The notes beneath the pieces were generated by a model. The model was not told where the DNA came from. It saw nothing but the letters and a program-made list of their open reading frames with translations, and did no database searches. This document shows positions 3,895 to 51,900 of a stretch of DNA of 64,000 nt, piece after piece (within the stretch, counting starts at the first letter, position 1; each line of letters starts with the position of its first letter). Both the position numbers and the translations under genes were made by a program. Source of the stretch: Laetmonice hystrix (taxonomy: Eukaryota). The stretch is taken from assembly GCA_965235115.1 (NCBI GenBank), contig OZ249440.1, positions 9,300,001-9,364,000 of the forward strand, given 5' to 3'.

Positions 3895-3982
3895 AACATT
3901 TTCACATATTCGTTGGCGATCTCAGTCCAGATATAGAAACACACCAACTAAGAGATGCGTTCGCACCGTTTGGACAAATATC
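3895..3982 (+). CDS. TIAL1: TIA/TIAR exon (88 nt), RRM2 N-terminal part: [29 protein letters not shown]
   Basis: Branch-like TACTAAT at ~3863, acceptor ...cttgtgtcttgcAG at 3893-3894, donor TC|gtaagt at 3983; RNP2 IFVGDL. Confidence 0.97.
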
Positions 3983-12900: not shown

Positions 12901-15900
12901 TTCGTAAACAGGCGTGCTGGTAGGCACGTGGAGCGGTATCGGAAAAAATAACCGTCCTTGTTTGGGATCCAGTAAAATGTGCACATTGATTCCTAGAACC
13001 ATGGAACACCCTCCGCTATCAAAAAGAAATCACCAAGGAGTTAACCCTTATGATGTACAAGTATCTACTGTAGCACGTTTCATTCTAATGGCGTTGGCTG
13101 AATCAAAGGGTTGTGTTGAATTTGGAATCTATGAGTCGATCTGTTTGATGGCCATGACAATGGCGGGGACGAGACCAGAGTTAATAGTGACCTCGATGGT
13201 TTTGTCATGTGGACAAGGGGGTAGTTTATTCAAGTGGGACATCCTTGGATAGGTAATTACCAGCAAGGATGGCCTGGAAAAAGTCGTTGGCCCACACAGC
13301 AGGCACCAAGTGGGCGGCTAGCAGGAAAGTAGAATGCAGAAATTCGGTGACGAGCAACAAATTATGCAGAAAGTGGGTGACTGGTAACAAAGCAGGTAGA
13401 AAGGAGACGGGCAAAGAACGCGTCACGGGATGTTGTAATTGATGAGACTGACTCAGCACACTTAGAGGAGGAAGAGGAAATGTGGGCAAGGAGTGTGCAA
13501 TAGATGGGATTAGCGGGGAAGGAGTGTGCAATAGATGAGGCAGTTATTGGGTAATTCAACACTCTTGTTTGCACTCGTAAGCAGGGCATAAGCTATTTAC
13601 ATGTCAGCAGTGAGTTCATTGCTGTCTATCCGACCCAAAACTACCGTGGAAAAACCCCACAGAACAGATTTAGTTGTTTGATACTTTCAAGAGCGATCGT
13701 TTGACAAAACCGGGGCCCTGCATAACATTGTTTCTGCTCTTTTGATATTCAAAGAGGAAGTGAACACAGTAATGCATTTATTTTTCAAAAGAACAGATAT
13801 AAACTAAATGGCATGCCCGATAAAAGGTTCGGTTCTATGTTGTGATATTGTAAAGTAAATTGATTATGCTTCCACGAAAGGGAAAAATGACGAGGTCTTG
13901 CTCAGTGATTTGCTAGAACCAGCTTCCTGCCATAGCTTTATTTCAATGTGGGTGTGCTGCGTGTTGCGGTAGCATAGTTGTGCGCGAGATAAAAGAGGGT
14001 TATGCTTTCAAGTGGACAGAATTGTTTCCCTCCCGCTATGATAGCGAGCCACCGACTGGCATGTTAGTTGGTGGCGCTGATCAAGCTTGGTCAGGTCACA
14101 GAAGTGCAGTAGGGTCACAGCAGTCGGGTGGGGTGGGGGTGGGGGTGGGGGTGGGGGGGGGTTCCATTGGCCATCTAGTCAGGACACAGATAGATTCTAG
14201 TGATTAGGGGAATACACGAAATGCTGTCCTTACGCCTGTGTCTTTTTAAAATTAATTTTTATTATTATCTTTTTGGTACCTGCAGGTACATTAGCACCAT
14301 TTTTGATTTAGATCCTAAAACAGACGGGTTTGACATGGACAGGCAAAGCTGGCGTTGCGGGATGAATGCTAGCTCCGACACCCAAAGTTGATAAGCATTA
14401 ATACGCTTATCTTGACTGGATTAGGCGAGAGTGAGAGAGAGAGAGAAAAAAAAAGGAGGATGAAAATAACTGTCAAGTAAAATTAAGTGTTGCTAAATGG
14501 CCTCGAGCCGCAGATGTCAGTGGGAGGCGATGTTGACTCGGCATATCGAGTAAATGGCTTTGGGCAGGCAAGTCGGGCCTTTTCTGTCCAAGCACGCAAA
14601 TTAAATTGGTTTAGATAATGGTAAGGCGTTTAAAAATGCAACTAGCCGGCAGGTGTTCTGGCCATGTGGATTCTTACGAGAAACAAAGTAACAGGTTGAA
14701 AAAGACTGTTGACACAGAGGAAAGTGACGGATGGCCTTCCGAAGGTTGGCCATAGAATTCTATACTTATTGCCCCATTTCCAGTCAGGTCATAAATAGGC
14801 TTTTTCCATGCGCCGGGAATATTGCTTCTGTGGAGGAGAAAAGGGCGATATGGTTTATGTGAAAGTCATCTTTGAAAAATAAGGCATGGGGAATGTTGAT
14901 TTGTGGTCAGAAATTCGCAGCTGCGTGGAAAACTTGTTCAATGCTGTGATGTAGCGGTGGCAAACCATGTCTACAGCACCGTGTTGTATTCACTTTGAAA
15001 AAAAACTAAAATGAAAAAAGGAGCGAAAAAACAAATATGAAGTCTGTCATGAGTAGTATGTAAATATTAACGGCATCATTAATATGGTGGCGTCTGTGCG
15101 AGGCGGATCCGAAGCTAACATATTGTCGCCATGGCGGCAGCGTGTCAACACAGGTGGGGAACATGATTATTTCAATGAGTACCTCCCGCCGGCGGGGAGG
15201 GATAGATATGTGTTCAGCGTGGCGCGCCCATCGCAGCAGCTGTCCGTAACCATGGCCAGAACCGTTGAGTCGTCCTTGGTCTCCTGCCCCTCCTCCCCCT
15301 CCTCCTCCTCCCTTCTCCTTCTCCTCCCTACTCCTCCTTGTCTCCGTCACCAATATGAAAGCTCCCGTCGAAGATGAATATTTCAGAGACGACCCCCAAT
15401 GTGTCTGATTGAATCCAGCAGGAGTGAGGTGTTGAAGGCAGACGTACAGCAGCCTACTGATTGAGGCGAGCACCATGTTCACACTATGTTTATCCTTATC
15501 TTCACCTATAGTGGGAGATAATGTATTACAATCTGTTTAGGCTGAGATAGAGGCACTACCCGATCGCTTGCCTCATCCCCCCCCCCCCCCCCACCACTCC
15601 CGGTATGGCGGTGGCACGTACGTCGCTTATGAAGGATTTAAAATATTTAGAGCTCTTTGCAATGCACCATTATCATGTGGTGGCAGGACGGTGAATGTGA
15701 TCACGTTACACAATATACATAATAATAGGGCGACCCCATCGTCAGGATTGTCGGGCACGGGTCGATCAACCTCACCGCCCGTCATCAGGCCCCCACATGG
15801 GGACGAGACAGAGAGCGGTCGCAAATTAAATGTAGGTAAAACGGGGTAATTTACGTGAGGAACACACACTGGGACCCGACCGAGAGGGCAGGGAGGGAGG

Positions 15901-18900
15901 GTCGTGAACCTGGTTATGTTTTTATGGACATCAATATTGATGACAAACATTTTGAGCAATTAATGAATAATTTTACAGTTATGCACTTGAACGCAGTTAC
16001 ACTTGGCTTGGTAGAGTATACACACAGACAGCAGGTCGGATCACGTTGCCATGGTAACGCCTCAACAACAAACAGGTCGATGTTTTACAAACTTTACATA
16101 GCCGGGGTTGGAACTTTACATAGAAGAGAGATGACGTTATCGGCGGCGCAGCGATCATGACGACGAAAATACCAGATAATGATCGAGCTGATTCACAGGA
16201 ACACACACAACACACGACACGGGATGCCCCCCCCCCCCCTGAGAAAGTCAAAGTTGATAGGGGAAGGGGGGATGCGCCCTGGCTACCTGATGGTGCAATG
16301 AACGTTGTTGTTATTGAGTGTTGTCAGTGAAACGACCATTGTGTTGTCTTAGGGTTCAACTGTTTCGTGTCGTTGGGCGCAGCTGAGTACTGTAAAGCTC
16401 CTGTCCAATGACAAAAGACGCCCAGGTGGAAAAAAATCCGAAATCTTTTCAATATCGAACCTTTAACAATATCGGATACTGATCCATTGAAGTTTTCGAG
16501 AGATATTTCCAGGAACGGAGGAAAGTGTGATGAAATTGCTGGTGTTTGCATGTAGTTTAAAGATATATGTAGTCATGGAATAAAGGCAGGTTGTGTAAGA
16601 TTTTGAGTAAAGAATGAGCGAGGACATGACGACAGACTGGTGTGAGTATATTCCAGTAAGTAAAAACCCAACCCGTCAGTGTTTACCTCGCAAAGGTGGA
16701 ATAGAAAAGAAGCTCAAGGAAGGGAAGCTCAAAGGGGGAACAGAATTTGAAGGGAGTTTATTAGATCTGTTTGAATTGCTGGAGGGGGCGGGAGAGGGCT
16801 GGGAGTTCAATTTGGCCATCACTACTGAATTTTGTCTTTGGCCATAAGGTTGCTTGCCACAGAGATGCCAACTATGGGGACGGAATTGATAGAACATCGG
16901 CTGGCCACTTAGAAGAAGAACGTTTTACGCTGTGTGAACATGTTGGTGTTGGGAAACTTTGAGTGACTTTAGGCGGCAGGCGGTGGACGGAAGAGAAAGT
17001 TGAACTTTATGGGCAGTGAGGGTGGGGTTGTCGTCGTTAGACGTCCTACAGTAGGTGGTCGTCGGCGTTGGCATCTCTGTGACTCGGCACGTAAATATGG
17101 CCGCCGCTGTGACATGAGTACTTGACTAAATCTACGCCTCCGTTTCCTCCAATGGCAGATCAGAATTGGCGGTCACATGACATGAAAGAATTTGAGCTCC
17201 ACTTGACGTGTGACGCCAACTACCAACAAATAAAGCGTGTGCACTGAACATGTCCAGGCTATGTATGCCTTTTCATTCCTATTTTATTTATTATTTGTTA
17301 CCTTTTTATTACATCGTCATTTTCCTCTTTATCCTACTGTCTTGCCCTTACCGTGAGTGGTATCTCCGTGGTCGGATACATTTTATCAAACTACTTCAGT
17401 CGACTAACTAGTACGCACCATTTGACATGTTTAGAGAAGGAAATAAATTTGTTCATCATTATATTTGTTCCTAGGTATTATGGAAAAAATCGACTAGAAG
17501 TTTTTATATTGTTTACCATCTCAAGGCAGTCTTTTTTTTAGCTCTTTCTCTTCCTTTTCTAAATCCACTAATTCACCCCGTTCAAAACGAACGCGTTTCG
17601 TTCGCCCGGATGACCTCATTATGAACTTCACCCATAATGAGGTCAGCAATGGGTCGTTCCAATTTCTATCCTTGCTCCGTTTTTTTTATTTGAATGTCTT
17701 ACGATTAGCTGAATGCAGTGCAACACAGCCAATACTATTAACCTTTGCCTATCTGCTAACCCAGCGGCCTGTCGGTGCAATGCTTTTATTTTTTGGTAGT
17801 AGGCCAAGAAATAAGTATGAAGAAAACAAGTCTGATTTTGGGGTAAACCTGTGTCAGCTTTAAAGAGGTCAGTTGCCATGGAAACGTGTAACAGTTGAAG
17901 GGATACAATGTGTTGGGGTTTAGGATGGGATTACCAGAATAGAGGCTTCCCATGGACAGTTACCGTTGGCAAGCGGAGTCATCCAGTATCTGCAGGCTCC
18001 AGTTATTCAGGAATTCAGGAGGTGGTAGTTGGATAAACGGGAAATAATAATAATAATTTTTAAAAAAGCTATGGGGATGGGAAAAATAAGGGCATTGCAT
18101 GAGGTCAGGTCTGGCAACATTTGACTACCGTACTTTTAGAAAGTGTTTTTCCTGCTCTGTATGTGTGTCTATGATGTGTGGTCGTTGTAAATGTGGCCGG
18201 TTGGCGAAGTATGTTCTTTACATTAACAAGATGCCTCCGAACCCCCCAACCCCAGTCCCCTCACCCCGCCCAGGTAAATCAGTACACCTTGGCCAGACAG
18301 ACCCACCTCTAACATCCGACCTCGCAGTCCTCAAAAAGTGAAACTGGTATGACTAAAATTTTGATATGGGCATCCAAAAAGCTTCTCTTTTTGGGGTTAG
18401 CCTTTGTGGATAGGCTGCGGCTGGATGGGTTGTCTCAGCTCCGGCACGGAGAGTAGACTCGAGTATACGACGAATGAGGGGAAAACAGACTCACGCGTAT
18501 GTAGACACTCAAAAGGTGAAAGAAAATCTCTTGTGTGGGCGGGCAGGAAGAAGTTAAGCAGGTGCCGGACTTGCACAAAGTTACTCGAGACGAGATGACG
18601 TAGTCGGGCAGACGGCAGAGAGTTGAGGCCCAAAGCGAGGCAGAGCGATGGTTGCTGCGCATGACAGCTACATTACATTTTCTGACCGACAGAGGGCGCT
18701 GTGTAAGGCCAGGTGGGTGTCGGTACAGTTAAGGAGATCCCGACTCCCTGTTGTATTGTTGGTCTCGTCAGTTTCACCATAGTGAACAGAGCACCAGTCT
18801 CATCCGTCAGACGGGAGGCCCCGTGAGGATATTTACCCGGGGGCTGTAAGTTAACATTCGGACAACCCCACCCAACCCCCCACTCCTCACCCCTAGAACA

Positions 18901-21900
18901 CCCATACAGCTCCCCATGGACTGGCATGTAATTAAAGTCAGCTATAGAAGAGGGAATTAGAATGCTAATGCCAGCGGGCCATATGTGACATGTATGTCAT
19001 GTTGGCCGGTGGCAACCCGGGCACCAGTCTCAAGATACCTGGCCTTCAGCGCCTACAAGGTCCGGGTAAGGAAAACACGGGAAAGTCAGTGTGCAGCCAG
19101 GGTAAGATGGGAATGGATGCTGCCAACCTTAGATCCGGAAGGGGGCTGGGAATGGGGGGGGAGAGCACCCCCCCCGTCCCCCTTTTTTTAGATCGTCTCA
19201 TTTGGCAGCTTGCCTGATGGTTTACAACTACTTGCAGAGTTCGTTCCGTTGTAGTTAAACATGACAGCCATTGCGGCCAACCGGCAGTTAAGTGGGGATG
19301 AGACCAAACACCAGTCCTGGTCCCCACGAAAAAGACATTTTCGTACATAATTCATTGATGTTTTATTGTTTATTGAATGCAGCCCCCCCCCCCCCCCACC
19401 GCCACCACCACCTCCCCACCACCACCACTATCACCACCACTACCACCACCTTCCCCCCACCCCATCCTTTCCCCCGTCCATCCCTGGGTTTATGTTTTCT
19501 TCACTTTCACCACCGCATGTCTCATTTTGTCCCATTCACAGTCCTGTTCTCTGATTGAAACGATTCTCCGTTTTTCATCCCCTGATTACCAGCACCAAAA
19601 CCTGTGTCAGTATCATTCACTTGCAATGGGTGATTTTGAAATCCTCTGAGGATTACGAAAAGCGACACTGTAACAATGCATCCTATGATTGAAAATGCTT
19701 TTTGAATGTCACAAATGTTTTTGACTATTTTGGCCGAAAATGAAAGTTTTGCCTTTGTATAAGCTAAATGGAATCGGTTATTTTTTCAGCCATGAAAACA
19801 TTGGGAATGTTGTAGTTTTCCCTGTAACGACTTAAGTATATGCTGAAGAGAACACGGCATCTTGTTTTACGTAGTCTCATTTTCACACTATTTCTAATCT
19901 CTCTTTAACACTTTGCACGGTCTTGCATATTTTATTTTCGGTGTTATCATCCCATGATTAATTCCCCGGAATAATGATGTTTGGAATTTAAAGCATGGAA
20001 TCCCATTACCGGCATAATCTGATGTTTCCAAAATTAGGTGCGGCGTCAGAAAACTACGAATTGATTTTTGGTTAATGACAAGGACTGTGCGGACACCAGC
20101 CAAGACGTGCATATACCTAACGGGCTTCGAATAAAAGGAGGGGCGGGGGTTCCTCTGTCGCGTCACCGCCGTGAAATTACACAATAATGGCAGGGTAATT
20201 AGCTAAAGGCAGCCTCCATTTTGTTCTAATTAAGCAGCAGTTATCATGGAAATGTTTAATGGCCAAATAACGGCTGAACCGACATAAACTGATGAATGTT
20301 TGATCGGTTGTGTCACACCAGGAGGTGGCAGCTCCTAGGAGACTGTGGCTCGCTGTAGGACGAGGCCCCGAATCCCCTGTCAGGCCGACTGGAGAATAGG
20401 CGATGAGCCCCGGCCCGAGCCCAACTTCACCCCTAGTCATTGAAGAAGCTCCCATAGCACCAGCCTATGAATTCTCTATACCTGTAATATTTGAGCTTTA
20501 ATGGAGTAATTTGTGCAGTCCGGAAGTGATTAAATGGACGCGGTTGAATTTTTCATTCCTACTTTTAAAAGTCCGAGACTGGTTCTGGAATGGAACTTTC
20601 CCGCAGTCTACTGAGACGGGGGACGTTAATAGTGCAGTGGGCTGGACTGACAATAGGACCCTTTAGGACACAAGAGGCAGTTCACAGCAACTTCTATTTC
20701 CAACAAGTACGTGTTAGGGGGCCACGGATACCCCAGGAGCATCTATCAAAGTGGTGTCCCTATTTCAAAAGTGGCTCAGAAACTTAGGGAATTGAAGGAG
20801 TGCAATGAGCTGCAAGAGTTTAACATCGATGCTGGTTTTCGAGTCCGACTGCTCCATTTGACCGCAGAACAGGACTTTGGGAGTTTGCGAAGAATTGGGG
20901 TTGTCCGAAGGAGTGCATGTTACAACAGTGAAGCATGTGCAATCAAAAGCAACTACGGTTGCTAGAATGATCTAGAACCGTGTGTGGTTTTGGTGTTTGT
21001 TCGGTGGCAAGCATGGTTGGATGATGTAGACTAGCAGTAAGGTCGAGTCCCAGCCAAGTCGACAACCATAATATATGTCTGTTATTCACCGAACCCCAAT
21101 CCTTCCATATAGGCAGTAGTCCTAATGTGTCTGGCATTAGATGGTGGAGGGAAGGCGAGTGTGAGCGGTGACAATTAGCCTGGAGGGGCGACGAGTCGGG
21201 AGGAGACGATCAGGAGGAGGTTACAGCCCTCCTGGCTCCAGTGATCCTCTCCGCACACACCCCTCAACAAGGGCCACAAATGAAGAATTGCGAGCGAACC
21301 AAAACGGGCGTGGTTGGGCCGGCTGTTGGCAAGTGTAGCGTAAATTGGCAGGTTACCGTGAGTGACCCGCCCGTAGTGGGGGGCTGGGGGGCTGGGGGGG
21401 GGGGGGGGCCTGGAGTGTGGTGAAGGTCCCTGACTTGAGACGGTTCAAGTCTGCAGAGCACAGTGATCAGAGTGGTATAGTAGTCTTTACCCTAACCCTC
21501 TACCCCCCCTTCCTGGCCGGGGCTGAGATGAAGCTATTCCTCCCATCCCCTGCCAATAAACACCCCCATGCTTCCCGCTACCGCCCGCCCTGCTGTGTGA
21601 TTATGAGTAGACACCGTCTGATTCAAGGTCGAAATACAAAAGTCGAGACATTTCGGCTCATAATCACACGTTTCCAGTGTGTGCACGCAGAGCGAGGAGG
21701 GAATCCTCAATGCCATGTTGGCTGTCAGGTTGGCTGGTTCGGACCTTGCCAGCCAGGGCACACACTATTCCTACCCTGGCCTGCCTTACCCGTCTCAACA
21801 GTAGCGGCAGAATGGTATTCATACCATATGAACATTGCTGAATGCAACCAGCGATGCAGCGGCTATGAAACTAGCCCGTCTCAACCCAAATGGCTTTCTC

Positions 21901-24900
21901 ATGTACGGCAGGTGCATATAAAATTTGGTGGAAATTCTCAATTTAAACTTAGGTGTGGCGAGGCAGAGCAGCCCGCCTTGGAACAGGAAGCTGTACCCCT
22001 TGCGGTTGACAAACCAGAATGTTTTTCCTGGCAGTTTTGCATTTCCACTGGTATTGTTTTGCTGGTGGAGGCATAGTAAGCTGCGGAAATGTGATGTAAT
22101 CCATCTTATCGTAATAGTGGAGGAAAGTCGGCGTGGTCAGGCAGATAAGGCAGCCGTAATAAAGCCATTTTCACCTCGCCAATTGATCCGTGGTGAAGTT
22201 ATCCATTCATCAACCATTGTAGCACCCGTTTCTGTTTGACATGAGAAATGATACTCAAACCACATCAATTGTAATAAATTTGTCCGGAAAGTGCACCAGA
22301 TGTATTGTGCATTGAACCAGCAGACTTAACCTGAATGTCCCGAGCAAAGCCCAAAGCCATTAAACACAATCGATTCAGAGGGGATTTCTCCTTTTTTTTT
22401 ACCCCAAAAAGGGTCCATTTTAAACCAAATTTCGGTGGTTTTATTACCCATTCATTGAATTTCTGACATATGTAAATTTTCACTAAATCAATGTCTACAC
22501 AACAGCATCTTCTGTGCAGGATTTTCTATGCCCATCATATTTGCTGATGTGCATGAATGGGTGGTGACTCATTTGTTGCTTGCCTGGTTACGTGAATACC
22601 TACCTTGCCTTGGCCGCCATAGATCTAAGTTAACAATCACCACTTGAATTCATTGTGCCGCTATTTAAGAATCTGGTCGATCCCGCTCGGCTCTGCTATG
22701 TTGCGCTACGCCATTTGCCATAGTACTTGTTTAACCAAGCATCCAAAGTTTCACATGTTAAATCTAATATTCTATAGCCGTGAGCTTTTCAAGTCACTCC
22801 AATGTAACCCTCTTTTCATGCAAACCCTTTTTTTATTACAGCTTATAGATTTTTGTTAACAAATTTCCGAAACGCAAGCTAATGGTTTGCATGGTGATCC
22901 AGCTGTCCGAGGATAATATCCTTCCCATGAGCTGAGTTTCTTACTCTATAGTCAGTAGTGTCCTTTTAACAGAAAAAGGTTGCCAGGGTCTGTCAGATTA
23001 GGAAAACAAGAAGAGGCTCACAACTAAATACTATCATGCAATTAGAGTATAATTTAAGGGAAGGGGTAAGTTGTCCCCCTCTGATCGTGAACTATTTGTC
23101 TCCGGTGATAATTTATATGAGGACAGTGTAGGGTTACAGTAAAGTAAGGATGGTTACCGGAGATTGTGTCGTGAAGATGTGAGCGAGAGACATGAACCTT
23201 GTCGTGACGGTTGTGAGTGCACCAACCAGCCACGTTTTGGGGCCTACCACAGCCCAACCTCGACCCACACTCACTGGTGGTGTAAACACCAACACATCAT
23301 ACAGTTTCATTCACGTCAATACCACGGCTCCCCTCACTCCCTCCCTCCTTCCCTGTACCCATCCGTCCTTACTCCCAACATCCACCCAGATCTTACAATT
23401 CCTGAAATGTTTCTTGCCCCGATCAGTACACGTCCCATCCAGCGGTTGCTGGCGCCAATGACCGACCGCCACTAACTCATCAACTATTGCTTTTGTAGAG
23501 ACTGTAAAATCATCCGCGACCCACAAACGCTCAAGTCTCGGGGCTACGGATTTGTTTCATTCGTCAAAAAAGAGGTGAGTGGATTTTGTTGTCTTGATGG
23601 CAGATTACGGTTCGGGGGTCCAGTTTTTTAAGATCTTGCTTAAGCTTAACATTTTTGGTTGGCTGGTCTGCGTAAGTTTTGAAAAGCTGAGCCCAGGGAT
23701 ATATTCCGACGTGCCTGCTGGGCCGTTCCTCATATAATAGACGGGAAGGTTTTTAGATCAGAAAAGTGTTAACAATTTGCTTGTATCTTGTTGCTTTTTG
23801 TTTAAAAGTACAGGTTTTAGCTGATATATTTCCTTTACTGGGTGACCTTGAAGTTGCATGTTTGTCCAGGTCGAACTGAGGTTACTTCTATCCCAAGATG
23901 ACTAGATTAAATTTTATAATATCATATACGTTATCAGCATCGACCTAGCCCAGATCTGCACCTTATAATGGTAAACTTGAATGTGTCGTTTTTTCCGCAA
24001 GTAGGCGAGGAATCAAAAACATTGGTGGGACTAAAATGGGGGTTTGAGTGTGAATGGCCAGGTAGCCCTTGCGTAGGGGGTTACGGTTGGGGTGGAGGGA
24101 GAGAGGAGGGTTCCCGGTACATGAAGCTGACCACAAGGCAGCATCACCCGGCCACTTGGCATTCTGTCCAGGTGTGCTTTATGTCCACCCATCAAGTCGG
24201 CGATATCTGCAATCGCTCAAAGCGGGCGCCAACAACACATGGCCGGAGCGTGCCCTGACGTCAGTAATGGGTCGATCCGTCAAACGTCAGCCGTGGCCAC
24301 GTTATCCCGCATTCACGGCCACATGCCACCCGACGGGTCGGGCAGGTGGCGCGACGGGCCGAGCCCCAGGCTGGCCCTAAACACGTGGCTTTGTGTCTAG
24401 GTGTAGCATCGTGGCGGTCCGGCAAGGGGGGCGCTAGACGTGGACGGTCCGGCAAGGGGGGCGCTAGACGTGAACGGTCGGCAAGGGGGACGCTAGACGT
24501 GGACGGTCCGGCAAGGGGGGCGCTAGACGTGGACGGTCCGGCAAGGGGGGCGCTAGACGTGGACGGTCCGGCAAGGGGGGCGCTAGACGTGGACGGTCCG
24601 GCAAGGGGGGCGCTAGACGTGGACGGTCCGGCAAGGGGGGCGCTAGACGTGGACGTACAGAATATTACAATGATAATGACAACGGGGACTACAATGAGGC
24701 ATGGCCAATAGATGTCAGCATCATGTTGGGCATTCCTGGGGCAGTAATCAGACCAACCCAAAGTGATATCACCATACTCGGACAGCAATCAGACCAACCC
24801 AAAGTGATATCACCATACAGTGACAGCAATCAAACCAACCCAAAGTGATATCACCATACAGTGACAGCAATCAGACCAACCCAAAGTGATATCACCATAC

Positions 24901-33900: not shown

Positions 33901-36900
33901 GTCCCAGCACTGAACGCCCAGTCCCACCACTGAACACCCAGTCCCAGCACAGAACACCCAGTCCCACCACTGAACGCCCAGTCCCAGCACTGAACACCCA
34001 GTCTCACCACTGAACACCCAGTCCCACCACTGAACGCTACCGCCAGGCCCAGCCCCAGCACAGAAAGAAAGCCGCCAAGCGAACGTTACAAATTACTAGT
34101 GTTGTGTTTTGGCTGGCGGGTTAACATTGGGATTGATCTCCCAAGGCATGGCAGGATTTAGAGCTGGACTTTAGGAAAGCGCTTCAATCCGAGCGACATC
34201 CAAAAATGCCGGAAGAAGGGAGCTCATCTGCATTAACGTTGAGGAGGGACGGCCTGTCATGCATCCCCGGATCAGTTTGAAACGGTCGTTTTAATTGGCT
34301 CCGCGTGTACTTTTGAGTGTTGTTTGAGCGAGGTTGTACTGGATGGCAGCAGAGGGGAGAAAAACGTTGAAACGAATGAGGACGGGTGGGGGATTAAGGC
34401 AGCAATGAGAACCGTATTTGGCGGAAAGCGGGCGTGATTAGTCGGACACCAACCTGACGGCTTTACCGTCTTGTTCTGCCCGGGGTGAGTTTTTTTTATC
34501 GAAGTCAAGCCTCCCCCAGGTTGGAAACAATGACATTGTTTGGCTCGCTCGGTCTGACATCAACCACGCAGCGGTCTGCCCCTGCCTCCTCCCCCGAAAC
34601 CATTATCAATAAAACAATTGTGCAGATGAAATCGGACAAGGCGGTAGCCAGACATGAAAATTGCTTTCCTCTGTGTATCCAGACATGGCAATTGGTTGCG
34701 TCGGTGCCTTCTATTCTTGCTGACTTTGCCCCGCGAACATTGGCAGGATGCTGGAAGTCCCGACGGCTCCGATCAGGTAGCTGGCTGGCTGGCGTGGTCT
34801 CGGCCAACTAATGGCAGGCTGGTTGTTTCACTACACTAAACTGGCGCGCGAACGTGAGCCTTTCCGTCCCGATCCGTCGTCCCAGCCGCTGGCGGCTGGC
34901 GGTATGGGCACAGACGGCTGACAGTGGATAGTGTCAGCCAACAGATACCAATTCCAACAAGTCAAATCGACACAAATTACCGAAACTTGCTCTGGTGACC
35001 TGCGGAGTGGGATGGGCGAGGGAAGGGATCGCCGGCGGGGAGGGGAGGGTTGGAGGAGTTGGTGGGAGGGTAATGTATTAATACACACTGGCGGAATGAA
35101 TTTATCACCTTCCATTGAATTATTGAAATATGGGAAGTCCCTCAGAAGCCTAAAGGGCTGGTCTGTCGATGCTCAAAAATAGAAGTATTTAGCAGTCCTC
35201 TAAATTAACTAAGTCGTATACGTGATTTTTTAAAAATTCATGATGGCAGTTGCATATAGGGCAAATATGCAGCTAATGGGTGTGTTCCTGTCAGAAAATG
35301 ATAACCACTAAAAAAATATCGTATGTTAAACATTTTTATCTTTGTGTTTTTCAGGATGCAGAAAATGCAATAGCTGGAATGAATGGTCAGTGGATCGGAA
35401 GTCGGGCAATACGTACAAACTGGGCATCTCGGAAACCACCTGCACCAAGCAATAAGGAGTGTAAGTTTCACATTCAGTTATACGTATAGTAGCTGTAGTC
35501 TAATGCCAAGTTGAAGCGTACCATGATAAGGAATGTAAGTTGCTCATTTAACATTGAATTATACATATACACTGGCTATGGTCCATTACAAGTGTAAATG
35601 CACCATAATAAGAACTGTAAGTTGCTCATTTAACATGGAATTATACACTGGTTATTGCCTCAGGGCCGTCACTACCGAGTTGAGGAAGTGCACCATTATA
35701 TGTGCAAGGACTATGAGATCATAATGTACGAGTGAGCAAGGACTATGAGATCATAATGTACGAGACTAAGTGAAGAATGATTGTTAGTCATTGTAATGGT
35801 TCATAACACTTGCCATAAAACGCCAGGGGGCGTAAAGGGAAAATTACCTTGTAACAAGACTGTCTTAATTTTTCTGGCCCTATTAAGAGAAGATTGGTAC
35901 TTCCATCTTCTTTTTAATGAAGAAATGTTCAACTTGTGCAGAACCACAACGAAAATATACGATTAGCCCAAAGTGGTACGAACGGCCCTGAGAAGCTGTC
36001 GAGTAAGCAAGCGGCTATTGTCTAGTAATATAGTGGCAGCCGTGCCTGCCAGGTTATCATCAACACCAATTGGAGTGAGCCGTAAGTTTAGGATCCCGAC
36101 GTATCTGTAGGGATGGCGGGAGACAAAAGGTTAGGAGGGCCTCCGTTACCACAGGGGGTCGTTAGAGCGGCCACCGCCTCCTGGTGCAAGGCAAGCAAGA
36201 TGAATTCATCCCCCCTAGAGTGTTAGGGGACTGTGTCGGCCCCGGACCTGCCCACCACGTTGGCAGACCGTCATTTGTTGGCATCAACCCCGAAAAAATC
36301 AATAGGGGGGAGGCAAAAAATTCTTAAGTCTTCCTTGTTGTTCAAAGGCTGGCGTGAATATATTAGAAGAATTTATTTCGGTAGAGTGTAAGTGAGGTGT
36401 ATTATTGATGAGCAGAAGTGAGCAGGTGAGTTTCTACACTACTTCACCTGCCGGGGTGATGTGGGCAGCCCCCAGCCCCCAGTTTGTCATTTGTCCTGGT
36501 CTCTCGTCCTGAACAAACCCCATTCTGTGCCAGTGAGATGTAGAACCTCTCATTCCGGCCACAGTCTAATGTCCCCAGAAACCCCGAGCCTCCACATTTC
36601 TCGTATGCCGTCAGAAGGTCGCCTGATGGCCTCTCGTCGACAGCCCAGTCCCTCCAGGTAGTTGGCCCCTGGCTTTCCATTACTTACACGTTGTCATTGT
36701 GTCCCGGAATAATCCCTCGCGGCCCCCTCCCACCCTCGACCATTTCCCGGGACCCCCATTAAATCCAGACGCCATGAAATAACGCCATGTGTAAAGGGCC
36801 CACATTGTCCAGCGTGACCACATCCCTCAAGTACTTGCCGCCAAATTAAGGTCATAAAACATACATCGCGAGTTAACTGTGGGTGCATTCAACCATTGGT

Positions 36901-39900: not shown

Positions 39901-42900
39901 GTGAGGTGGTAGATCTAGGGTGGCTGTTGGCTCCATCCTGAAGTGCTGCTGCGACGAGCTGGTTGTGGTGCTGATCCGGAGATCGGGCAGACCCGTGTGG
40001 CTCATTAGGGTGAAGGCCGGGCCCAGGCTGGCTCCTTACATTCATCATGTATTGTGATGCTTGACGGTTGATGTATGCCAGACAGGAGACATTAAGGTGA
40101 CTGGTGTTGAATTGTGGGCCAACATTGGGAGGAAGGAGGGTGGGGGTTAAGATGGGCGGCAGGTCGTCCTTGGTTTGGGGTGGGAGTAGGGTAGGACATT
40201 GGCGGCTGATCCGGCCCGGGCAGTAGCTCGCTAGCAGTCGCGCCAGGCCGGCCGCTGCCAGACTTTCCACATGTCCGGAATCACTCATGGACCGAGCCCC
40301 ATAGAAAGGCAGCAGCCGGGGCGGTCATTGCGAGCACGACTCCCTTTGTCGGGCCGTGTATCGGAGGGTCGTAAATCTCGTATTGTACGCCGTCCTGCTG
40401 ATCAGACTGCGATACGTCGCCTGATGGGACAGCGCGGTGTCCTACCGAATGGGATCAATGGTGTGCATCGGCCACACATGTCCCCCGCCCGGCCACCTGC
40501 AAGGCAAACATACCTGGCCCAGAAATAGGATGCCGCAATGCGATACTCGCTCATTCTTCTGTTGGGGGACACAAGACAAGAAATGTTGGTGAATGGAAGT
40601 GGCGCTTGGTGTTGGCGCGAGTAGAACTGATTCATGTCCTAACACGGACAAGTTGTAGATATTCTACCCCTAGATTATTGTAGGGGAGGCGGGGGCGATA
40701 CGGAGGTAGAGACCGGTTGAGGGTAGAGTTGGTCACCCTTGGCGGACTGACTTACCCTTATGCTGGCTTATAACCCTGACCGGTCAGATTTACTGGTCGA
40801 TAAGGTAGGATGGTCACAAAATACGGCCATGATTACCACGGAATTCTGACCAAGGCACTGAATGATATGTACTTGGTTGTCCCTCTATGTTTNNNNNNNN
40901 NNNNNNNNNNNNNNNNNNNNNNNNNNNNNNNNNNNNNNNNNNNNNNNNNNNNNNNNNNNNNNNNNNNNNNNNNNNNNNNNNNNNNNNNNNNNNNNNNNNN
41001 NNNNNNNNNNNNNNNNNNNNNNCAGCCTCTCGCTCTCTCGCTCTCGCTCTCTCATTCTTGTTCTCTCACTCTCACTCCCTCGCTGTCACTCCAACCCAAC
41101 GATATGATACCCAGACACATAGATGGGTTTCTGTTTACAGATCCATTATCTTGATTGATAAACATTGTTCATGGTCCATGCCTGACTCCGTGGTTTTTTT
41201 CTTGTTGCAGCCTCTAAGCCCCTGAGTTTTGAGGAGGTGTACAATCAGTCCAGCCCAACCAACTGTACAGTCTACTGTGGCGGCATTCTCAATGGTCTAT
41301 CTGGTGAGTTTATATGCTGTTCTCGTCGAGTAATACCCATAGCTACTGTATCATATATGCGCTCCATAAAAACATTATTTTCTAACAATATAACATGTTG
41401 GAAAGCTGATGAGTGTGTATTATTATGGCTTGGCTGCGTGTACTGTTCATTAAACTAGCATAAATTGAAGGTTTTCTTTAATGTCTGTGTGCTGTCATAT
41501 CTATGATCAGCGTTGTCTGAGAGAGTATCAGCAATATGTGTGTGTTTACAATACACACAGACTACTCATGTTTAGAGGATACTGTTCGCACGATGAAAGC
41601 ACCATATCATGTAGAAATGGGGGTCCCACATCGATGATAAAATTGTTCGATCTATCTCACCGGTGTAAGATTGATATACTACCCTCCCCTACCCCCGCTC
41701 CCCCCTTCCACCCATCCATACTCATCCATCGTTCATTCGCGGGAGGTTGCTATTTGAGCGTATAGTGTTCGCCGATAACCTTTGACCTCTATCACCTAAC
41801 GCCGAATGACCAGGTCAAGTGCTTTTTACAACCTTGTAAAGGTCAGACCCGGCTGTGGCGACCTTGACCTTTCTGTGATTGGTGATAGACTCGGAAGGTC
41901 GGGCGGGGTGGCGCGCGCGCTAAATGAGAACTGGCCGCCAAATGAGTACTCGGACGGCGGTTGGCGGCCATGATTTCCCAGGACGCACCGCGCCGCGCTG
42001 TCTCAGTTATGAGGTAGATAAGAAGTTTGCAGGAGAGAAAAGCGCGCCAAAAGGAGAGAACGGCGTCCGTGGCTGATCAAAGGCCAAAAGTGGTGGTGGA
42101 TTGGGGAGGGGTGGGCGGCTCTGGATAGACCCGTGAACTTGGTGTGTTCGGCTGGGTTTTTTAAATAGTAAGTTAGAGGCAGGCCTGAGGGAAAGGAGCC
42201 TTGTGGTAGGTTAGCTTCGGTGAATCGATTTCCTGACTTTAATCAAACCGTAAGAACAAGAAAGATTGCGCTGACAGGGGCTTAGCGTTGGTACACGCTA
42301 CTCTATCTATTGGTTGACGTTGCTACCAGTAGTATATAAAATGGGAGTTCTGGACCAGGACTCTCATTTTATATACTACTAATACTACCTCAGGGCAGTA
42401 CCTTCCTTACCAATGAAATGCTGGACGATTAACGCGATGCTGAAGATAGTTGAGGATGTCATAGTGTGATAAGCTCATTGCCATCAGTGTATCAGATGTG
42501 CAAGTGTTGAATTTAGACCAGGGAGAGTTTCGGGGGGGGGGGGGGTGTATGAGTGGGTTTAGGCGCTGGCTGTGTTAAACCCTCGTAACCAACCCCTTAT
42601 GGGCTCGCCCTCTTCTTTCGCCACCACCTCCCAAGATACATGTCGGACTAAGCCAAGTGAGGGAGGAGTAGCAGTTGTAGTATGTAGTAGCAGTTGTAGT
42701 ATGTAGTAGTAGTATGTAGTAGTAGTATGTAGTAGCAGTAGTAGTATGTAGTAGTAGTATGTAGTAGTAGTAGCAGCAGTAGTAGTATGTAGTAGCAGTA
42801 GTAGTATGTAGTAGCAGTAGTAGTATGTAGTAGTATGTAGTAGCAGTAGTAGCAGTAGTGCCCGACTGTAGAGAGATTAGGTAGTATGAAACATGAGCGT

Positions 42901-48900: not shown

Positions 48901-51900
48901 CGGTGTAATGTCAATGTCCTCAGACAGCATGTGTGATGGGTATTGTGTCCTCAGCCAGCAGATGTAATATTTGTGCTGTTTCCGACTTTTGAATCTGCAG
49001 AAGAGTTGATGCAGAAGACCTTCGGGTCCTTCGGACACATCCAGGAGATTCGTGTCTTTAAAGACAAAGGCTACGCATTTGTAAGGTAAGTCTTATGGAA
49101 AAACGATTTACTTTTATAGTTTATTTAAATTCAAGTTTGCAGCACTTGTTCAGAATAAGTTCTCTTGGAAATTTAGCAATGATTAGAATGTGCCTGCGAA
49201 CTTTTCGTGAAGCCAAGAAATTCACGGTGGCTTCCAGTTTGCTTTCACTCAATATAAGATCTTAGCACCCCTTAAATCTGATTAAAATTTGTCACTTTTG
49301 ATGAGCATGTATTTTCTCTCGTTCTTACTGCCCGGTTGTTGTTGTGGTGTTTAGATTTTCCACAAAAGAAGCAGCAGCGCAGGCGATTGTTTCGGTGCAT
49401 GGTACCGAGATCAACGGTCACACAGTGAAGTGTTCGTGGGGCAAGGAATCGAGCGACCCCAGTCAGAATGCTAACTCTGGCGGAGCTGCCGGGTCTGGCG
49501 GACAGGTGGCAGCACAGCCGGTAAGTAACTCCCCTCGCCCACCCTCTCAACTCCCACCAACTCAAAGCTTTCACTCTCTCACTCACTCTTCTCTCCTGTT
49601 ACGTTTTCTAGACTAACCTTAAGTCTCTACAGTTAAGTTACAGTGAGTGCTTTAGATAGAATTAAGAGAGAGAAAAAATCAAAGAAAAATTGACACATTC
49701 GAGAGAGCCACTAATCACAGTTTTTGTCCAGTGTATGTTACCAACTCGTGGTTGTGCCAAACCAGAAGTGATTTCCTCACCATCGTGGTGTGATCTGGTC
49801 GTATTAAGCCTTCCATATTACACATACCACATTTGCAATGCCTTGAGTGTTTTTGTTTTATTTGAGTTTTTAATTGACTCAGGATTTTTTGGTTTGCTTT
49901 TCTCAAGTTAGTTTGGATCAGCTCTAGCCCACATGTGTAAATCTTGCTGTGTATTTTTGTCATATATTCACATCTTCTCCCCCCCCCCCCCAACCGCCCC
50001 AGATAAAGTTACGAATTACATTGAAGATCTCATCTCCGAGAAACCCGTTAAAAACCGGCCTTCCATCGCTCGGCGTCTGGATTCGATTAAGGGCACAATA
50101 GGATCATTAGACGTGAAATTCCCACACTTCCCAACACAATTAACCTGAAGGGGTTAGACCATTCCGGCTAGGCTCAGACAAGATTTGCCTTCTGGCTGAA
50201 AAAAAGGAGTGGAAACCCAGGACGGTCGACTACTTGAGAATAGTCACCCATTGACGGACTATTTTCCCATGTGGTTCAAGTAATCTGAGTGATTTTGTCA
50301 GTCTCAGTGTGTAAGCTTAGGTTGACTTGGCTAATCTTACCAAGCTTACGAGAACAGAGAAGTGGGGAGATGGGGGTGACTGGTAGAAGGTGGGATCATG
50401 GCTATGGCCGGATGTGTTTTTATTTGGCAATATTGGCAAAGAGCGCAGTCGGTTCGTAAGTTTGTCCGATTTACGCCGATAAGTCGGACTCTTCCGTTAG
50501 TTGATTCGTCGGAGAATCGCCCCAATTCCTTGAATACGTAAAATCGCATTGGCAAAGTAAACGGTTCATGTGAAGTGGAGAGGGATAAGATTGAGGACTT
50601 GGAAAAGGGGATTTTTGATATCAGGTCCGGGCAAAGTCAATGGCAATGCATATTGAAAGTGGATAGAGTTATTGGATGGAGTTATGATGGATCCCTCATT
50701 ACATGTAAACACTATATAGACTGACACAAGCAGATACCTGGCGGATTCAGGAAACAGTTCGACCGATGGCTCCAAGTTTGACAACAATTCAACAATTAAC
50801 TCAATACTTCTTAAACTGAATACTTCTTGGCACAAACCTTACGAGTACTTGCTAGATCGCCTTTAGTCTGTGCGCCAGGACAGCGCCCCCTCCCAATTCT
50901 CAAACTAGGACCGGCCTACCTAAGTGTTTATTGGTGCACTGTCAGAATATTTGGCAAGGCCGAATTGGGTCACATGCTCCTTCTCAAGGGGCAATTTTCT
51001 TCCGGCGTCCATGTTTGTTGAGTGGACAGCGAGAGAAACAAATGCTTGAAGCCAAGACACGAAATCGTGTCTACATTGGGTAATTCAATACGTAGCCTGG
51101 CCCAAGTGTTGATGAATGTGATTGTAATTAATGCGAGGAGTATTGGCGCAGAGACTGCACAGGTCCCATCGGTCATATCCTTGGTAGAAGAAGAAGATCT
51201 AATGTTCTCCCGGGAAATAGCTACTTATGGTGTCGCTTTGGTCCGGGGATGCCAAGGTCATTGGGTGTGGGTTTCAAATTGAAACGTTCATGTTAAATAA
51301 TGCTGAGGAATGGGAGGAAAATGGTAAGCCTTCACGATTCTTGGGAAAATTAGTTTCGCCTTCGTCTTCAGATTGGGTGGGTGTGTGGGTGTGTGGGTGG
51401 GTGAGGGGTAGTGTTGTTTAACGGGTTGTACAGAAGTAGGTCAAGGCCACACGTCATATGTCACGTGACAGTTTTGGGAAGAGGCCGTTCGACTGTCTCC
51501 GCGACTGGACGATCTTTACGTATTCAGCGGGCTGTAAATAAATTGAAATTAATCTATTGTTGATGAGACGAACACTTTTTTCTCGTTGCTTGTACCGTTT
51601 GCATTCAGGTGTTTTCTTTCGGCGCCAGGGAAGATTTGTTGGAATTGGGCATAGTATATTGGGGTGATTAAAAAATATATGCTTCACGGGTATGTTACGT
51701 AGTTAGTTGGTAGCTGAGATACTAAAACGGTAACGGAAAACGATGGTGGGACCAAACTCAGCGGTAATCTAAGGGATTTAATTATGGAAAAGGGAAAAAG
51801 GTCGCGACTTTGGGGTCGACATGTGATTCATTGATTAACTTATCCATTACATTTACTGACCATTGGCCTATAAATTTGTCTTTTTAGACGTAGGTCAAAT

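What the first reader, a model, noticed from the sequence alone, without database searches (positions are those of the whole stretch)
17230..17650. Candidate TIA-autoregulated cassette exon (17475-17525) with a weak GC donor and U-tract, inserting 17 aa into RRM2
Seen: an AT/U-rich island deep in the 19.5-kb intron. It has a CTAAC branch-like motif (~17404), a good acceptor (ttatatttgttcctAG|G at 17474/17475) and a 51-nt open stretch. This is followed by a non-canonical donor AAG|GCAGTC and immediately TTTTTTTT-AGCTCTTTCTCTTCCTTTTCT. Phases fit exactly (TC|G ... AG|A), giving [29 protein letters not shown] with no stop. Established: TIA-1/TIAR bind U-rich tracts just downstream of weak 5' splice sites and recruit U1 snRNP via U1-C. 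Mammalian TIA1/TIAL1 use this to include normally skipped exons in their own pre-mRNAs, including in the intron after the 88-nt RRM2 exon as I recall it. Inference: this is an invertebrate equivalent of that feedback loop. It would make an RRM2-disrupted protein rather than an NMD target. If the GC donor is skipped and a later donor is used (e.g. TAA|GTATGA at 17815), the TAG at 17539-17541 would make it a poison exon, so there could be two outcomes.
Basis: partly seen in the sequence, partly recalled or inferred. Interest (0 to 1): 0.75.

Follow-up and report, generated by a model that had tools for sequence, protein, structure and literature searches.

The report
Wrong exon, conserved poison exon nearby
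The proposed 51-base exon in this TIA1/TIAR-like gene looks like a chance pseudo-exon, but 316 bases upstream lies a stop-carrying exon-like unit, conserved across species, with a weak splice donor and a U-rich tract, which is the layout TIA proteins are known to use on their own transcripts.

Summary
None of it is more than chance. The 19.5-kb intron holds 2233 frame-preserving, stop-free AG..GY pseudo-exons, and 72 score at least as well. The GC donor AAG|GCAGTC is far from the GC-donor consensus. In a related genome the acceptor, the donor and the T8 tract are all absent, and the stretch is at background identity with frame-breaking indels.

The flagged island does overlap a strongly conserved block, 17123-17344. 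It is 84-86% identical to the relative, against about 80% for the coding exons, while the rest of the intron does not align. The block reads as an exon unit:
- an ACTAAA branch-like motif, a pyrimidine tract and CAG|AT;
- exon 17159-17262, with an in-frame TGA at 17178;
- a weak donor TAT|GTATGC;
- a U-rich tract at 17270-17349, 92% identical.

The same unit sits in the orthologous intron of Ridgeia and Capitella. Vertebrate TIA1/TIAL1 have truncated isoforms that branch off at the same junction. No RNA data exist for this species, so inclusion and TIA dependence are inferred. The case is a new member of a known kind.

The parts
3895..3982 (+). Constitutive 88-nt exon encoding the first half of RRM2 ([29 protein letters not shown]). 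It ends in phase 2 (...ATA TC|gtaagt).
   Evidence: It matches the relative's mRNA contig L003:526-613.
23499..23574 (+). Next constitutive exon, 76 nt ([25 protein letters not shown]), with donor GAG|gtgagt.
   Evidence: The L003 mRNA joins 3982 directly to 23499.
17475..17525 (+). My reading is a chance pseudo-exon.
   Evidence: Its features are present. In the relative it is 49% identical with 14 gap columns, and the AG acceptor is lost. 72 frame-preserving pseudo-exons in the intron score at least as well.
17526..17565 (+). Non-consensus GC donor-like site GCAGTC, followed by T8 (17532-17539) and a pyrimidine-rich run.
   Evidence: It is 35% identical to the relative, where both the GC and the T8 are absent. 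One run (X3) carries a 1-nt deletion in the T8 tract.
17125..17158 (+). Conserved 3' splice-site region: the branch-like ACTAAA (17125-17130), a pyrimidine tract, and CAG (AG at 17157-17158).
   Evidence: It is nearly invariant between the window and relative E. The acceptor scores 4.3 bits in both species, within the range of this gene's real acceptors. ACTAAA and CAG|AT are also present in Ridgeia, and CAG|AT in Capitella.
17159..17262 (+). Candidate conserved poison exon, 104 nt. Read in the phase set by the upstream exon it gives TC|A TCA GAA TTG GCG GTC ACA TGA, with the stop at 17178-17180.
   Evidence: It is 78% identical to the relative. All six frames carry stops in both species, so it is non-coding. 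The equivalents are 108 nt in E, 114 nt in Ridgeia and 51 nt in Capitella, each with an early in-frame TGA. No transcript evidence exists.
17263..17268 (+). Weak 5' splice site TAT|GTATGC. GTATG is invariant in all four species, and exon position -1 is never G.
   Evidence: The matrix score is -1.1 bits in the window and in E, and it is the best conserved donor in the block. The invariant columns are shown.
17270..17349 (+). Conserved U/pyrimidine-rich tract (58% T, 80% pyrimidine) starting 7 nt after the GT. It contains TTATTTATT at 17284-17292. I propose it as the binding platform for the TIA protein.
   Evidence: 17263-17344 is 91.6% identical to the relative, the best-conserved part of the block. 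It is the most T-rich 80-nt stretch on the + strand of the whole window. U-rich tracts follow GTATG in Ridgeia and Capitella as well.
17400..17462 (+). It has no conserved acceptor after it.
   Evidence: alignment columns 385-450.
17676..17805 (+). Second conserved intronic block, 71% identical. It ends in an invariant acceptor-like ttttattttttggtagtag|GC (AG at 17801-17802). Its role is unknown.

Best explanation
The 51-nt stretch at 17475-17525 is a chance pseudo-exon. The functional element in the island is a conserved alternative-exon unit 316 nt upstream. It consists of a branch-like ACTAAA, a pyrimidine tract and CAG|AT acceptor, a roughly 104-nt non-coding exon (17159-17262) with an in-frame TGA seven codons in, a conserved weak donor TAT|GTATGC, and directly after it a highly conserved 80-nt U-rich tract (17270-17349).

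The proposed mechanism is inferred, not shown. The exon is normally skipped. When the TIA protein is abundant it binds the U-rich tract through RRM2/RRM3 and helps U1 snRNP onto the weak donor. The exon is then included, and the stop truncates the reading frame inside RRM2, so the mRNA is unproductive and probably degraded by nonsense-mediated decay. The result would be negative feedback of the kind described for mammalian TIA1/TIAR.

Shown here: the sequence anatomy, its conservation, the stops and the identity of the host gene. Inferred: that the exon is ever spliced in, that TIA is the factor binding the tract, and that the product is degraded.
For: - Host gene. It is a single-copy TIA1/TIAR ortholog. 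Its protein is 97% identical to P0154, and P0154 matches the TIA-1 RRM2-RRM3 structure 2mjn at E 5.6e-78.
- Conservation against a related genome. Coding exons are only about 80% identical at the DNA level, and introns otherwise do not align. Yet 17123-17344 aligns at 85.5% over 228 nt with E 1e-63. The U-tract part is 91.6% identical.
- Splice-site anatomy. Conservation starts at a branch-like motif about 30 nt upstream of a 4.3-bit acceptor. The best conserved donor is the weak GTATGC.
- Non-coding. All six frames have stops, and indels are not multiples of three.
- Deeper conservation. The same unit lies on the sense strand of the orthologous intron in Ridgeia piscesae and Capitella teleta. 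In each it has CAG|AT, an early in-frame TGA and GTATG followed by a U-rich tract.
- Uniqueness. GTATGY followed by at least 22 T in 40 nt occurs exactly once per locus, always at this place, and nowhere else in 412 kb.
- Shuffle tests. The donor plus U-tract match is reached by 0 of 200 composition-preserving shuffles of the orthologous intron in Ridgeia and 5 of 200 in Capitella. The ungapped Ridgeia match is reached by 1 of 500.
- Vertebrate parallel. TIA1/TIAL1 have many truncated isoforms that leave the canonical sequence exactly after ...FG(R/K)IS.
- Literature. [quoted passage not shown] Pyrimidine tracts within about 20 nt of weak donors, and the TIA/U1C pair, are conserved across metazoans (PMC2766253).
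Against: - No RNA evidence of inclusion exists. The only runs holding this genome are DNA.
- The one relative mRNA in hand skips the region.
- None of 159 invertebrate or other homologs with this junction shows the predicted ...GQIS-SE.AVT tail.
- The block contains motifs that also read as transcription-factor sites (a CCAAT box; E-box-like GTCAC.TGAC, present as two perfect CACGTG copies in Capitella; TGACGTG). Neighbouring small conserved blocks look like enhancer modules.
- The exon body is less conserved than the tract.
- The Capitella match is only moderately significant (5 of 200 shuffles; acceptor 13 of 200).
- I chose the thresholds of the composite pattern after seeing the sequences.
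- Other U-binding proteins (ELAV/Hu, PTB, hnRNP C) could be the readers of the tract.
Confidence: 0.6

Rival explanations
1. One reading: 17475-17525 is a real TIA-regulated cassette exon. It would use the GC donor and the T8 tract and insert 17 aa into RRM2, or act as a poison exon through the later donor at 17815.
For: All the sequence features exist and the phases fit. The acceptor score of 3.6 bits is within the range of real acceptors in this gene. A CTAAC-containing patch upstream is moderately conserved. A lineage-specific exon cannot be excluded without RNA data.
Against: The acceptor AG, the GC donor and the T8 tract are all absent in the relative. The stretch shows frame-breaking indels and background identity. 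The GC donor AAG|GCAGTC departs from the GC-donor consensus at +4 to +6, whereas this gene's conserved GC site keeps CAG|GCAAGT. 72 equally good frame-preserving pseudo-exons lie in the same intron. The T8 tract is length-polymorphic. A 17-aa insert between the two halves of RRM2 is seen in none of 159 homologs.
Confidence: 0.04
2. The conserved block 17123-17344 acts at the DNA level, as an intronic transcriptional enhancer or silencer, and is never an exon. Its splice-site-like features would be incidental.
For: It carries a CCAAT box, E-box-like palindromes (two CACGTG copies in Capitella) and TGACGTG. Other small conserved blocks in the same intron (18082-18122 and 18952-18993) look like POU/homeobox, CRE and E-box sites. 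Both species show a trough in diversity over about 1.2 kb, not only over the exon.
Against: What is kept across four species is the set of strand-specific RNA signals at fixed relative positions: CAG|AT, an in-frame TGA, GTATG and a sense-strand U-tract. The E-box-like motifs are not kept in E or in Ridgeia. The best-conserved part is an 80-nt U-rich run directly after a donor-like site. Vertebrate paralogs have spliced alternative exons in the same intron.
Confidence: 0.2
3. The unit is an alternative terminal exon with an intronic polyadenylation site. On this reading the acceptor at 17158 is followed by the AATAAA at 17229-17234, cleavage about 10-25 nt later, and the GU/U-rich tract acting as downstream element, giving a short truncated mRNA.
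For: AATAAA sits in a 24-nt stretch that is invariant between the window and the relative. The least conserved 11 nt lie just after it, where cleavage would fall, and a GU-rich then U-rich run follows.
Against: The hexamer is absent from the matching position in Ridgeia (AACAAAAT) and from Capitella, while GTATG and the tract are kept. No truncated protein with the predicted tail was found.
Confidence: 0.06
4. The unit is a real alternative poison exon, but its U-rich tract is read by another U-binding regulator (ELAV/Hu, PTB or hnRNP C type). This would be cross-regulation and not TIA self-regulation.
For: The tract contains an AU-rich nonamer (TTATTTATT) and many UCUU-like and CUUU-like elements. 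PTB is reported to antagonise TIA on such tracts (PMC2766253).
Against: The layout, a weak donor with the tract starting 7 nt downstream in the TIA gene itself, is the one documented for TIA self-regulation in mammals (PMC4385921). No data here separate the candidate binders.
Confidence: 0.1

Closest known systems
Mammalian TIA1/TIAR self-regulated alternative exons (Le Guiner et al. 2001, J Biol Chem 276:40638, as cited in PMC4385921; Sanchez-Jimenez et al. 2015, PMC4385921)
   Same: The host gene family is the same. The exon is normally skipped, has a weak 5' splice site and is followed directly by a U-rich stretch. Inclusion brings in a premature stop.
   Different: This is an invertebrate gene (closest named relative an annelid). 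Inclusion and TIA dependence are untested. The exon sequence has no detectable similarity to the vertebrate tails (SE.AVT here, against VSLKNGQ.., IAHKNGQ.. and ACFVHVS in vertebrates).
Vertebrate TIA1/TIAL1 truncated isoforms that branch off after the ...FAPFG(R/K)IS exon (for example P0370 Corvus TIA-1 X6, P0377 Chrysemys TIAL1, P0381 Agelaius TIAR X9, and the Logan clusters P0373 and P0382)
   Same: The alternative sequence enters at exactly the homologous exon junction and phase, and terminates within 6-40 codons.
   Different: I did not examine the vertebrate genomic sequence, so whether those exons have the GTATG plus U-tract layout is unknown. Homology as opposed to convergence is open.
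Highly conserved or ultraconserved poison exons of splicing regulators (Lareau et al. 2007; Ni et al. 2007; cited in PMC8980049)
   Same: It is a non-coding, stop-carrying exon unit, together with flanking intron, that is better conserved than the neighbouring coding exons of an RNA-binding protein gene.
   Different: Conservation here is 85-92% between two diverged invertebrates and only patchy at greater depth. It is not ultraconserved.
TIARa/TIARb 17-aa (51-nt) insert
   Different: The vertebrate insert lies in RRM1 and arises from alternative use of the last 51 nt of exon 3 (PMC9318959). It is not a cassette exon in RRM2, and nothing in the window corresponds to it.

Membership tests
TIA-activated alternative exon on the TIA gene's own pre-mRNA (weak 5' splice site plus downstream U-rich stretch) | The host gene encodes a TIA1/TIAR-family protein | tested here: met
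   The spliced window protein is 97% identical to P0154. P0154 hits the TIA-1 RRM2-RRM3 structure 2mjn at E 5.6e-78. Sources name the homologs nucleolysin TIA-1/TIAR.
TIA-activated alternative exon on the TIA gene's own pre-mRNA (weak 5' splice site plus downstream U-rich stretch) | Weak 5' splice site | tested here: met
   TAT|GTATGC at 17262/17263 scores -1.1 bits, against 1.5 to 8.1 for the gene's constitutive donors. It has the same score in the relative, and position -1 is non-G in all four species. The matrix is generic.
TIA-activated alternative exon on the TIA gene's own pre-mRNA (weak 5' splice site plus downstream U-rich stretch) | U-rich stretch of at least about 10 nt directly downstream of that donor | tested here: met
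   The tract at 17270-17349 starts 7 nt after the GT. It has 46 T in 80 nt, is the most T-rich stretch on the strand, and is 91.6% conserved. It is present in Ridgeia and Capitella.
TIA-activated alternative exon on the TIA gene's own pre-mRNA (weak 5' splice site plus downstream U-rich stretch) | Inclusion interrupts the reading frame with a premature stop | tested here: met
There is an in-frame TGA at 17178-17180. Equivalent early TGA codons occur in E, Ridgeia and Capitella.
TIA-activated alternative exon on the TIA gene's own pre-mRNA (weak 5' splice site plus downstream U-rich stretch) | The exon is actually spliced in at low level and rises with TIA dosage | not testable with these tools
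   No RNA run holds this genome. The reads laid were DNA contigs. The relative's mRNA skips the region, and no protein with the predicted tail was found.
   The relative lacks the AG, the GC donor and the T8 tract. The stretch is 49% identical with indels of 2, 11 and 1 nt.
   There are 2233 frame-preserving stop-free pseudo-exons in the intron, and 72 score at least as well.
GC-AG intron donor | Near-perfect consensus at the other donor positions, (A/C)AG|GCAAGT (from my own knowledge of published surveys, not checked here) | tested here: not met
   The candidate is AAG|GCAGTC, with mismatches at +4, +5 and +6. By contrast the conserved site at 52281/52282 is CAG|GCAAGT in both species.
Intronic polyadenylation site | Conserved AAUAAA hexamer upstream of a U/GU-rich element | tested here: inconclusive
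   The hexamer at 17229-17234 is invariant between the window and E. It is absent at the matching place in Ridgeia and Capitella.

The most novel reading that the evidence does not exclude
The stop-carrying exon in the intron after the ...FGxIS RRM2 exon, with its weak donor and U-rich tract, may be ancestral to bilaterians. On this reading annelid-type invertebrates and vertebrate TIA1/TIAL1 inherited the same self-regulatory poison exon at the same junction, and the TIA feedback loop is more than 500 million years old and was never lost.
Probability: 0.2. Interest if true: 0.7.

Novelty: new member of a known kind. Interest (0 to 1): 0.5.

Why it matters
Self-regulation of TIA1/TIAR through rarely used, stop-carrying exons with weak donors and U-rich tracts has been described in mammalian cells. 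A conserved unit with the same layout, at the same exon junction, in several lophotrochozoan genomes has two consequences.

First, the loop may be old and under strong selection. Here the U-tract is better conserved than the protein-coding exons.

Second, it gives a precise and cheap test. RT-PCR across one junction in Capitella teleta, a laboratory annelid, predicts a product 51 nt longer.

The case also carries a methodological lesson. Splice-like motifs in a long intron are abundant, and cross-species alignment moved the call by 316 nt and changed the predicted outcome from an in-frame insert to a poison exon.

Tried and rejected
- **RNA evidence.** The single run search, seeded with the terminal exon and 3'UTR so that expressing runs would be found, returned only three runs of one sample. 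All three proved to be DNA, with contiguous contigs across the intron and no joints. No splice junction could therefore be tested. The absence of reads is not evidence against either exon.
- **Repeat or transposon origin of the island.** The own-genome search found only the locus itself for 17230-17650 and for 17100-17360. Rejected.
- **Known RNA family or nested gene.** Rfam gave nothing below E 0.2, and no ORF of 90 aa or more lies near the island. Rejected.
- **The 13-bp perfect hairpin at 17611-17645** is not conserved in the relative. Set aside.
- **Protein-level search for included isoforms.** Two searches, with the N-terminal parts of P0154 and P0234, found no invertebrate protein continuing non-canonically after ...FGxIS. 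This is weak negative evidence, because stop-containing isoforms are rare and seldom annotated.
- **Metagenome-contig scans** for two invariant 22-mers of the block gave 0 hits.
- **A mollusc locus** (Ylistrum, P0159) could not be fetched because the gene range is too long. Owenia (P0223) is not on record. The nearest relative's contig (P0001) has no DNA available.
- **Polymorphism as a test of constraint.** The window species has a 1.3-kb SNP-free stretch at 16483-17811, and the relative's two contigs show a diversity trough there. With only 2-3 haplotypes, and similar troughs elsewhere, this is not decisive.
- **Le Guiner 2001** could not be read in the held library. Its content is taken from citing papers.
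Full report
**The observation.** The 88-nt exon 3895-3982 ends ...ATA TC|gtaagt, and the next exon begins at 23499. Deep in the 19,516-nt intron there is a CTAAC at about 17404 and an acceptor-like ttgttcctAG|G at 17474/17475. A 51-nt stretch (17475-17525) follows that is open in the correct phase, then AAG|GCAGTC, T8 at 17532-17539, an in-frame TAG at 17539-17541 and TAA|GTATGA at 17814/17815. The region is a low-GC island (GC 0.34-0.39 against 0.47 for the intron).

**The gene.** RNP motifs and exon-sized open stretches give these + strand exons:
- 3895-3982
- 23499-23574
- 35355-35460
- 41211-41303
- 49001-49085
- 49355-49520
- about 53585-53725
- about 55895 to the stop just after 56012, followed by the 3'UTR.

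A library-wide search with one exon and a follow-up search recovered TIA1/TIAR-family proteins. The spliced window protein is 97% identical to P0154. The mRNA contig of P0154 (L003) matches every exon boundary and joins 3982 directly to 23499. P0154 matches the TIA-1 RRM2-RRM3 structure 2mjn at E 5.6e-78. The gene is single-copy and very long, with RRM1 exons 50-360 kb upstream of the window. The closest named homolog is from the annelid Ridgeia piscesae, at 81%.

**Is the candidate more than chance?** It is not. The intron holds 42,378 AG..GY pairs 24-300 nt apart. Of these, 2233 are frame-preserving and stop-free. With a penalty for a GC donor, 72 of those score at least as well as the candidate; counting any frame, 1905 do. 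Requiring acceptor, donor and a U-tract all at the candidate's own level leaves only the candidate in 89 kb of intron, counting both strands. That is the frequency expected for the best pick from one 64-kb window. The donor AAG|GCAGTC also departs at +4 to +6 from the near-perfect consensus that real GC donors keep (my own knowledge of published surveys).

**RNA data.** It returned three runs of one sample. Laid on 14500-20499 they gave contiguous contigs with no joints, so they are genomic DNA. No splice junction can be tested for this species. The DNA does show that the T8 tract varies in length: run X3 has a 1-nt deletion at 17532. No SNP was listed between 16483 and 17811.

**Cross-species test.** An exon-sized ORF (P0003) led to a 4.3-Mb contig of a related animal in an ENA assembly. 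I walked along it in four look-ups to reach the orthologous intron (loci L004-L008). A second contig, 96% identical, gave L009. Between the two species the coding exons are only about 80% identical in DNA, and the introns do not align. Any alignable intronic block is therefore under constraint.

The candidate exon is not such a block. In the alignment the relative has no AG at the acceptor, no GC donor and no T-run. Indels of 2, 11 and 1 nt break the frame. Identity is 49% over the exon and 35% over the donor and tract, the same as the unaligned flanks.

**What is conserved.** Window 17123-17344 aligns to L008 6676-6900 at 85.5% over 228 nt, E 1e-63. That is better than any coding exon. The block overlaps the first 115 nt of the flagged interval. 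It is single-copy in the genome. It has stops in all six frames in both species and indels that are not multiples of three, so it is non-coding. It matches no Rfam family.

Its internal order reads as an exon unit:
- Conservation begins at a branch-like ACTAAA (17125-17130).
- It runs through a pyrimidine tract to CAG|AT, with the exon starting at 17159. The acceptor scores 4.3 bits in both species, within the range of the gene's real acceptors.
- The best conserved donor is the weak TAT|GTATGC at 17262/17263 (-1.1 bits in both species).
- Directly after it comes an 80-nt U/pyrimidine-rich tract (17270-17349). It is 91.6% identical, the best-conserved part of the block, and the most T-rich 80-nt stretch on the + strand of the whole window.
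- In the phase set by the upstream exon, the unit reads TC|A TCA GAA TTG GCG GTC ACA TGA, a stop after seven codons.

**Deeper conservation.** I fetched the annotated TIA loci of Ridgeia piscesae (L011) and Capitella teleta (L012). BLAST finds only the exons. A profile of the block places its best hit in the orthologous intron, on the sense strand, in both species, though at weak E-values of 0.17-0.19. Reading those places shows the same unit.
- Ridgeia has ACTAAA, a pyrimidine tract and CAG|AT at 13648/13649. GTATGT follows at 13763, then a pyrimidine-rich run of about 100 nt.
- Capitella has ...GGCAG|AT at 38304/38305 and CAGGCTTA|GTATGC at 38355/38356, followed by TTTCATTC and a long U-run.
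- Both upstream exons end ...ATC TC|GT, so the reading phase is the same. Ridgeia reads TC|A TGA. Capitella reads ten codons ending ...GCT GTC ACG TGA.
- The exon lengths are 104 nt (window), 108 (relative E), 114 (Ridgeia) and 51 (Capitella).

A composite pattern (GTATGY followed by at least 22 T and at least 30 pyrimidines in 40 nt) occurs exactly once in each of the four loci, always at this place. Each occurrence has a CAGAT acceptor 45-120 nt upstream. The pattern occurs nowhere else in 412 kb counted on both strands. I set its thresholds after seeing the sequences. As a more neutral test I used local alignment of window 17255-17300 against composition-preserving shuffles of the orthologous introns. 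The observed score is reached by 0 of 200 shuffles for Ridgeia and 5 of 200 for Capitella. The ungapped 25/36 match in Ridgeia is reached by 1 of 500. The four-species alignment (A4) has CAGAT and GTATG invariant.

[quoted passage not shown] The resulting isoforms carry premature stops and lower TIA expression (PMC4385921, citing Le Guiner et al. 2001). Pyrimidine tracts within about 20 nt of weak donors, and the TIA/U1C pair, are conserved across metazoans, and the effect depends on distance (PMC2766253). The unit at 17159-17349 has each sequence-level feature of that class.

My last protein search returned an unplanned result. More than twenty vertebrate TIA1 and TIAL1 truncated isoforms follow the canonical sequence up to ...FAPFG(R/K)IS and then either stop or continue with short novel tails such as VSLKNGQ.., IAHKNGQDLEG, ACFVHVS and CPNSKMVVKN. 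The tails cannot be intron read-through, because a read-through codon after TC|G would start with T. They come from spliced alternative exons.

It is unrelated.

**Limits and rivals.**
- No transcript shows the conserved exon included. The relative's mRNA skips it. No invertebrate protein in the searched collections carries the predicted tail. Scans of metagenome contigs for two invariant 22-mers found nothing.
- The block also contains motifs that could be transcription-factor sites, and nearby small conserved blocks look like enhancer modules. A DNA-level enhancer therefore remains a serious rival (about 0.2).
- An intronic poly(A) site is suggested by an invariant AATAAA at 17229-17234, but the hexamer is not kept in Ridgeia or Capitella.
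- Which U-binding protein reads the tract is untested.

**Verdict.** The island it flagged contains the donor and U-tract of a conserved, stop-carrying alternative-exon unit that is most likely the invertebrate counterpart of the TIA self-regulatory exons. It is a new member of a known kind, of moderate interest, and directly testable by one RT-PCR.

Noticed in passing
window 52228-52281 (conserved block 52189-52326): A second conserved exon-like unit lies in the intron between 49520 and about 53585. It has the acceptor aataacgcag|GCC, a 54-nt stretch that is open in the phase left by exon 49355-49520 ([18 protein letters not shown]), and a consensus GC donor CAG|GCAAGT. It is 87.7% identical to the relative over 138 nt. 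Three of the four exon differences are synonymous in that frame. The relative's mRNA skips it, and none of the fetched homologs contains the peptide.
   Followed up: partly
window 17676-17805 and 17803-17814: This conserved block ends in an invariant acceptor-like ttttattttttggtagtag|GC. Twelve non-conserved bases then precede GTAT in both species (TAA|GTATGA here, GCA|GTATAT in the relative). It could be a micro-exon, an alternative 3' splice site, or chance.
   Followed up: partly
window 18082-18122, 18952-18993, 21876-21936: Small collinear conserved blocks (74-88% identity to the relative) carry motifs that look like octamer/POU, homeobox, CRE and E-box sites. They are possible intronic enhancers.
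   Followed up: no
window 17611-17645: A perfect 13-bp inverted repeat with a 9-nt loop (TGACCTCATTATG / CATAATGAGGTCA). It is not conserved in the relative.
   Followed up: partly
window 17532-17539 and 17680-17687: Both T8 runs vary in length among the three DNA runs (a 1-nt deletion in X3 and in X1 respectively). No SNP was listed between 16483 and 17811.
   Followed up: partly
G000 contig C5, 8.94-9.36 Mb: The TIA gene is very long. The RRM1-coding exons match at C5:8944669, 9020201 and 9252789, so the gene spans more than 410 kb. No close paralog exists in the genome.
   Followed up: partly
proteins P0370, P0373, P0377, P0381, P0378, P0383, P0387: The tails of the truncated vertebrate isoforms resemble each other between the two paralogs (TIA1 VSLKNGQN.. 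against TIAL1 IAHKNGQDLEG and fish NAHRIGQELEG). This suggests that their alternative exon predates the TIA1/TIAL1 duplication.
   Followed up: no
L008 versus L009 (ENA ERZ25767047, two contigs): The related assembly holds the locus twice, at 96.4% identity over 16.8 kb. These are probably two haplotypes. Diversity is lowest around the conserved blocks (12 differences in 1250 nt against about 10 per 250 nt on average).
   Followed up: partly
protein P0283: A 121-aa TIA-like fragment is filed in NCBI as a hypothetical protein of Escherichia coli, on a 385-nt contig. It is almost certainly animal contamination of that assembly.
   Followed up: no
window 40893-41022: A run of 130 N lies just upstream of exon 41211-41303.
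   Followed up: no
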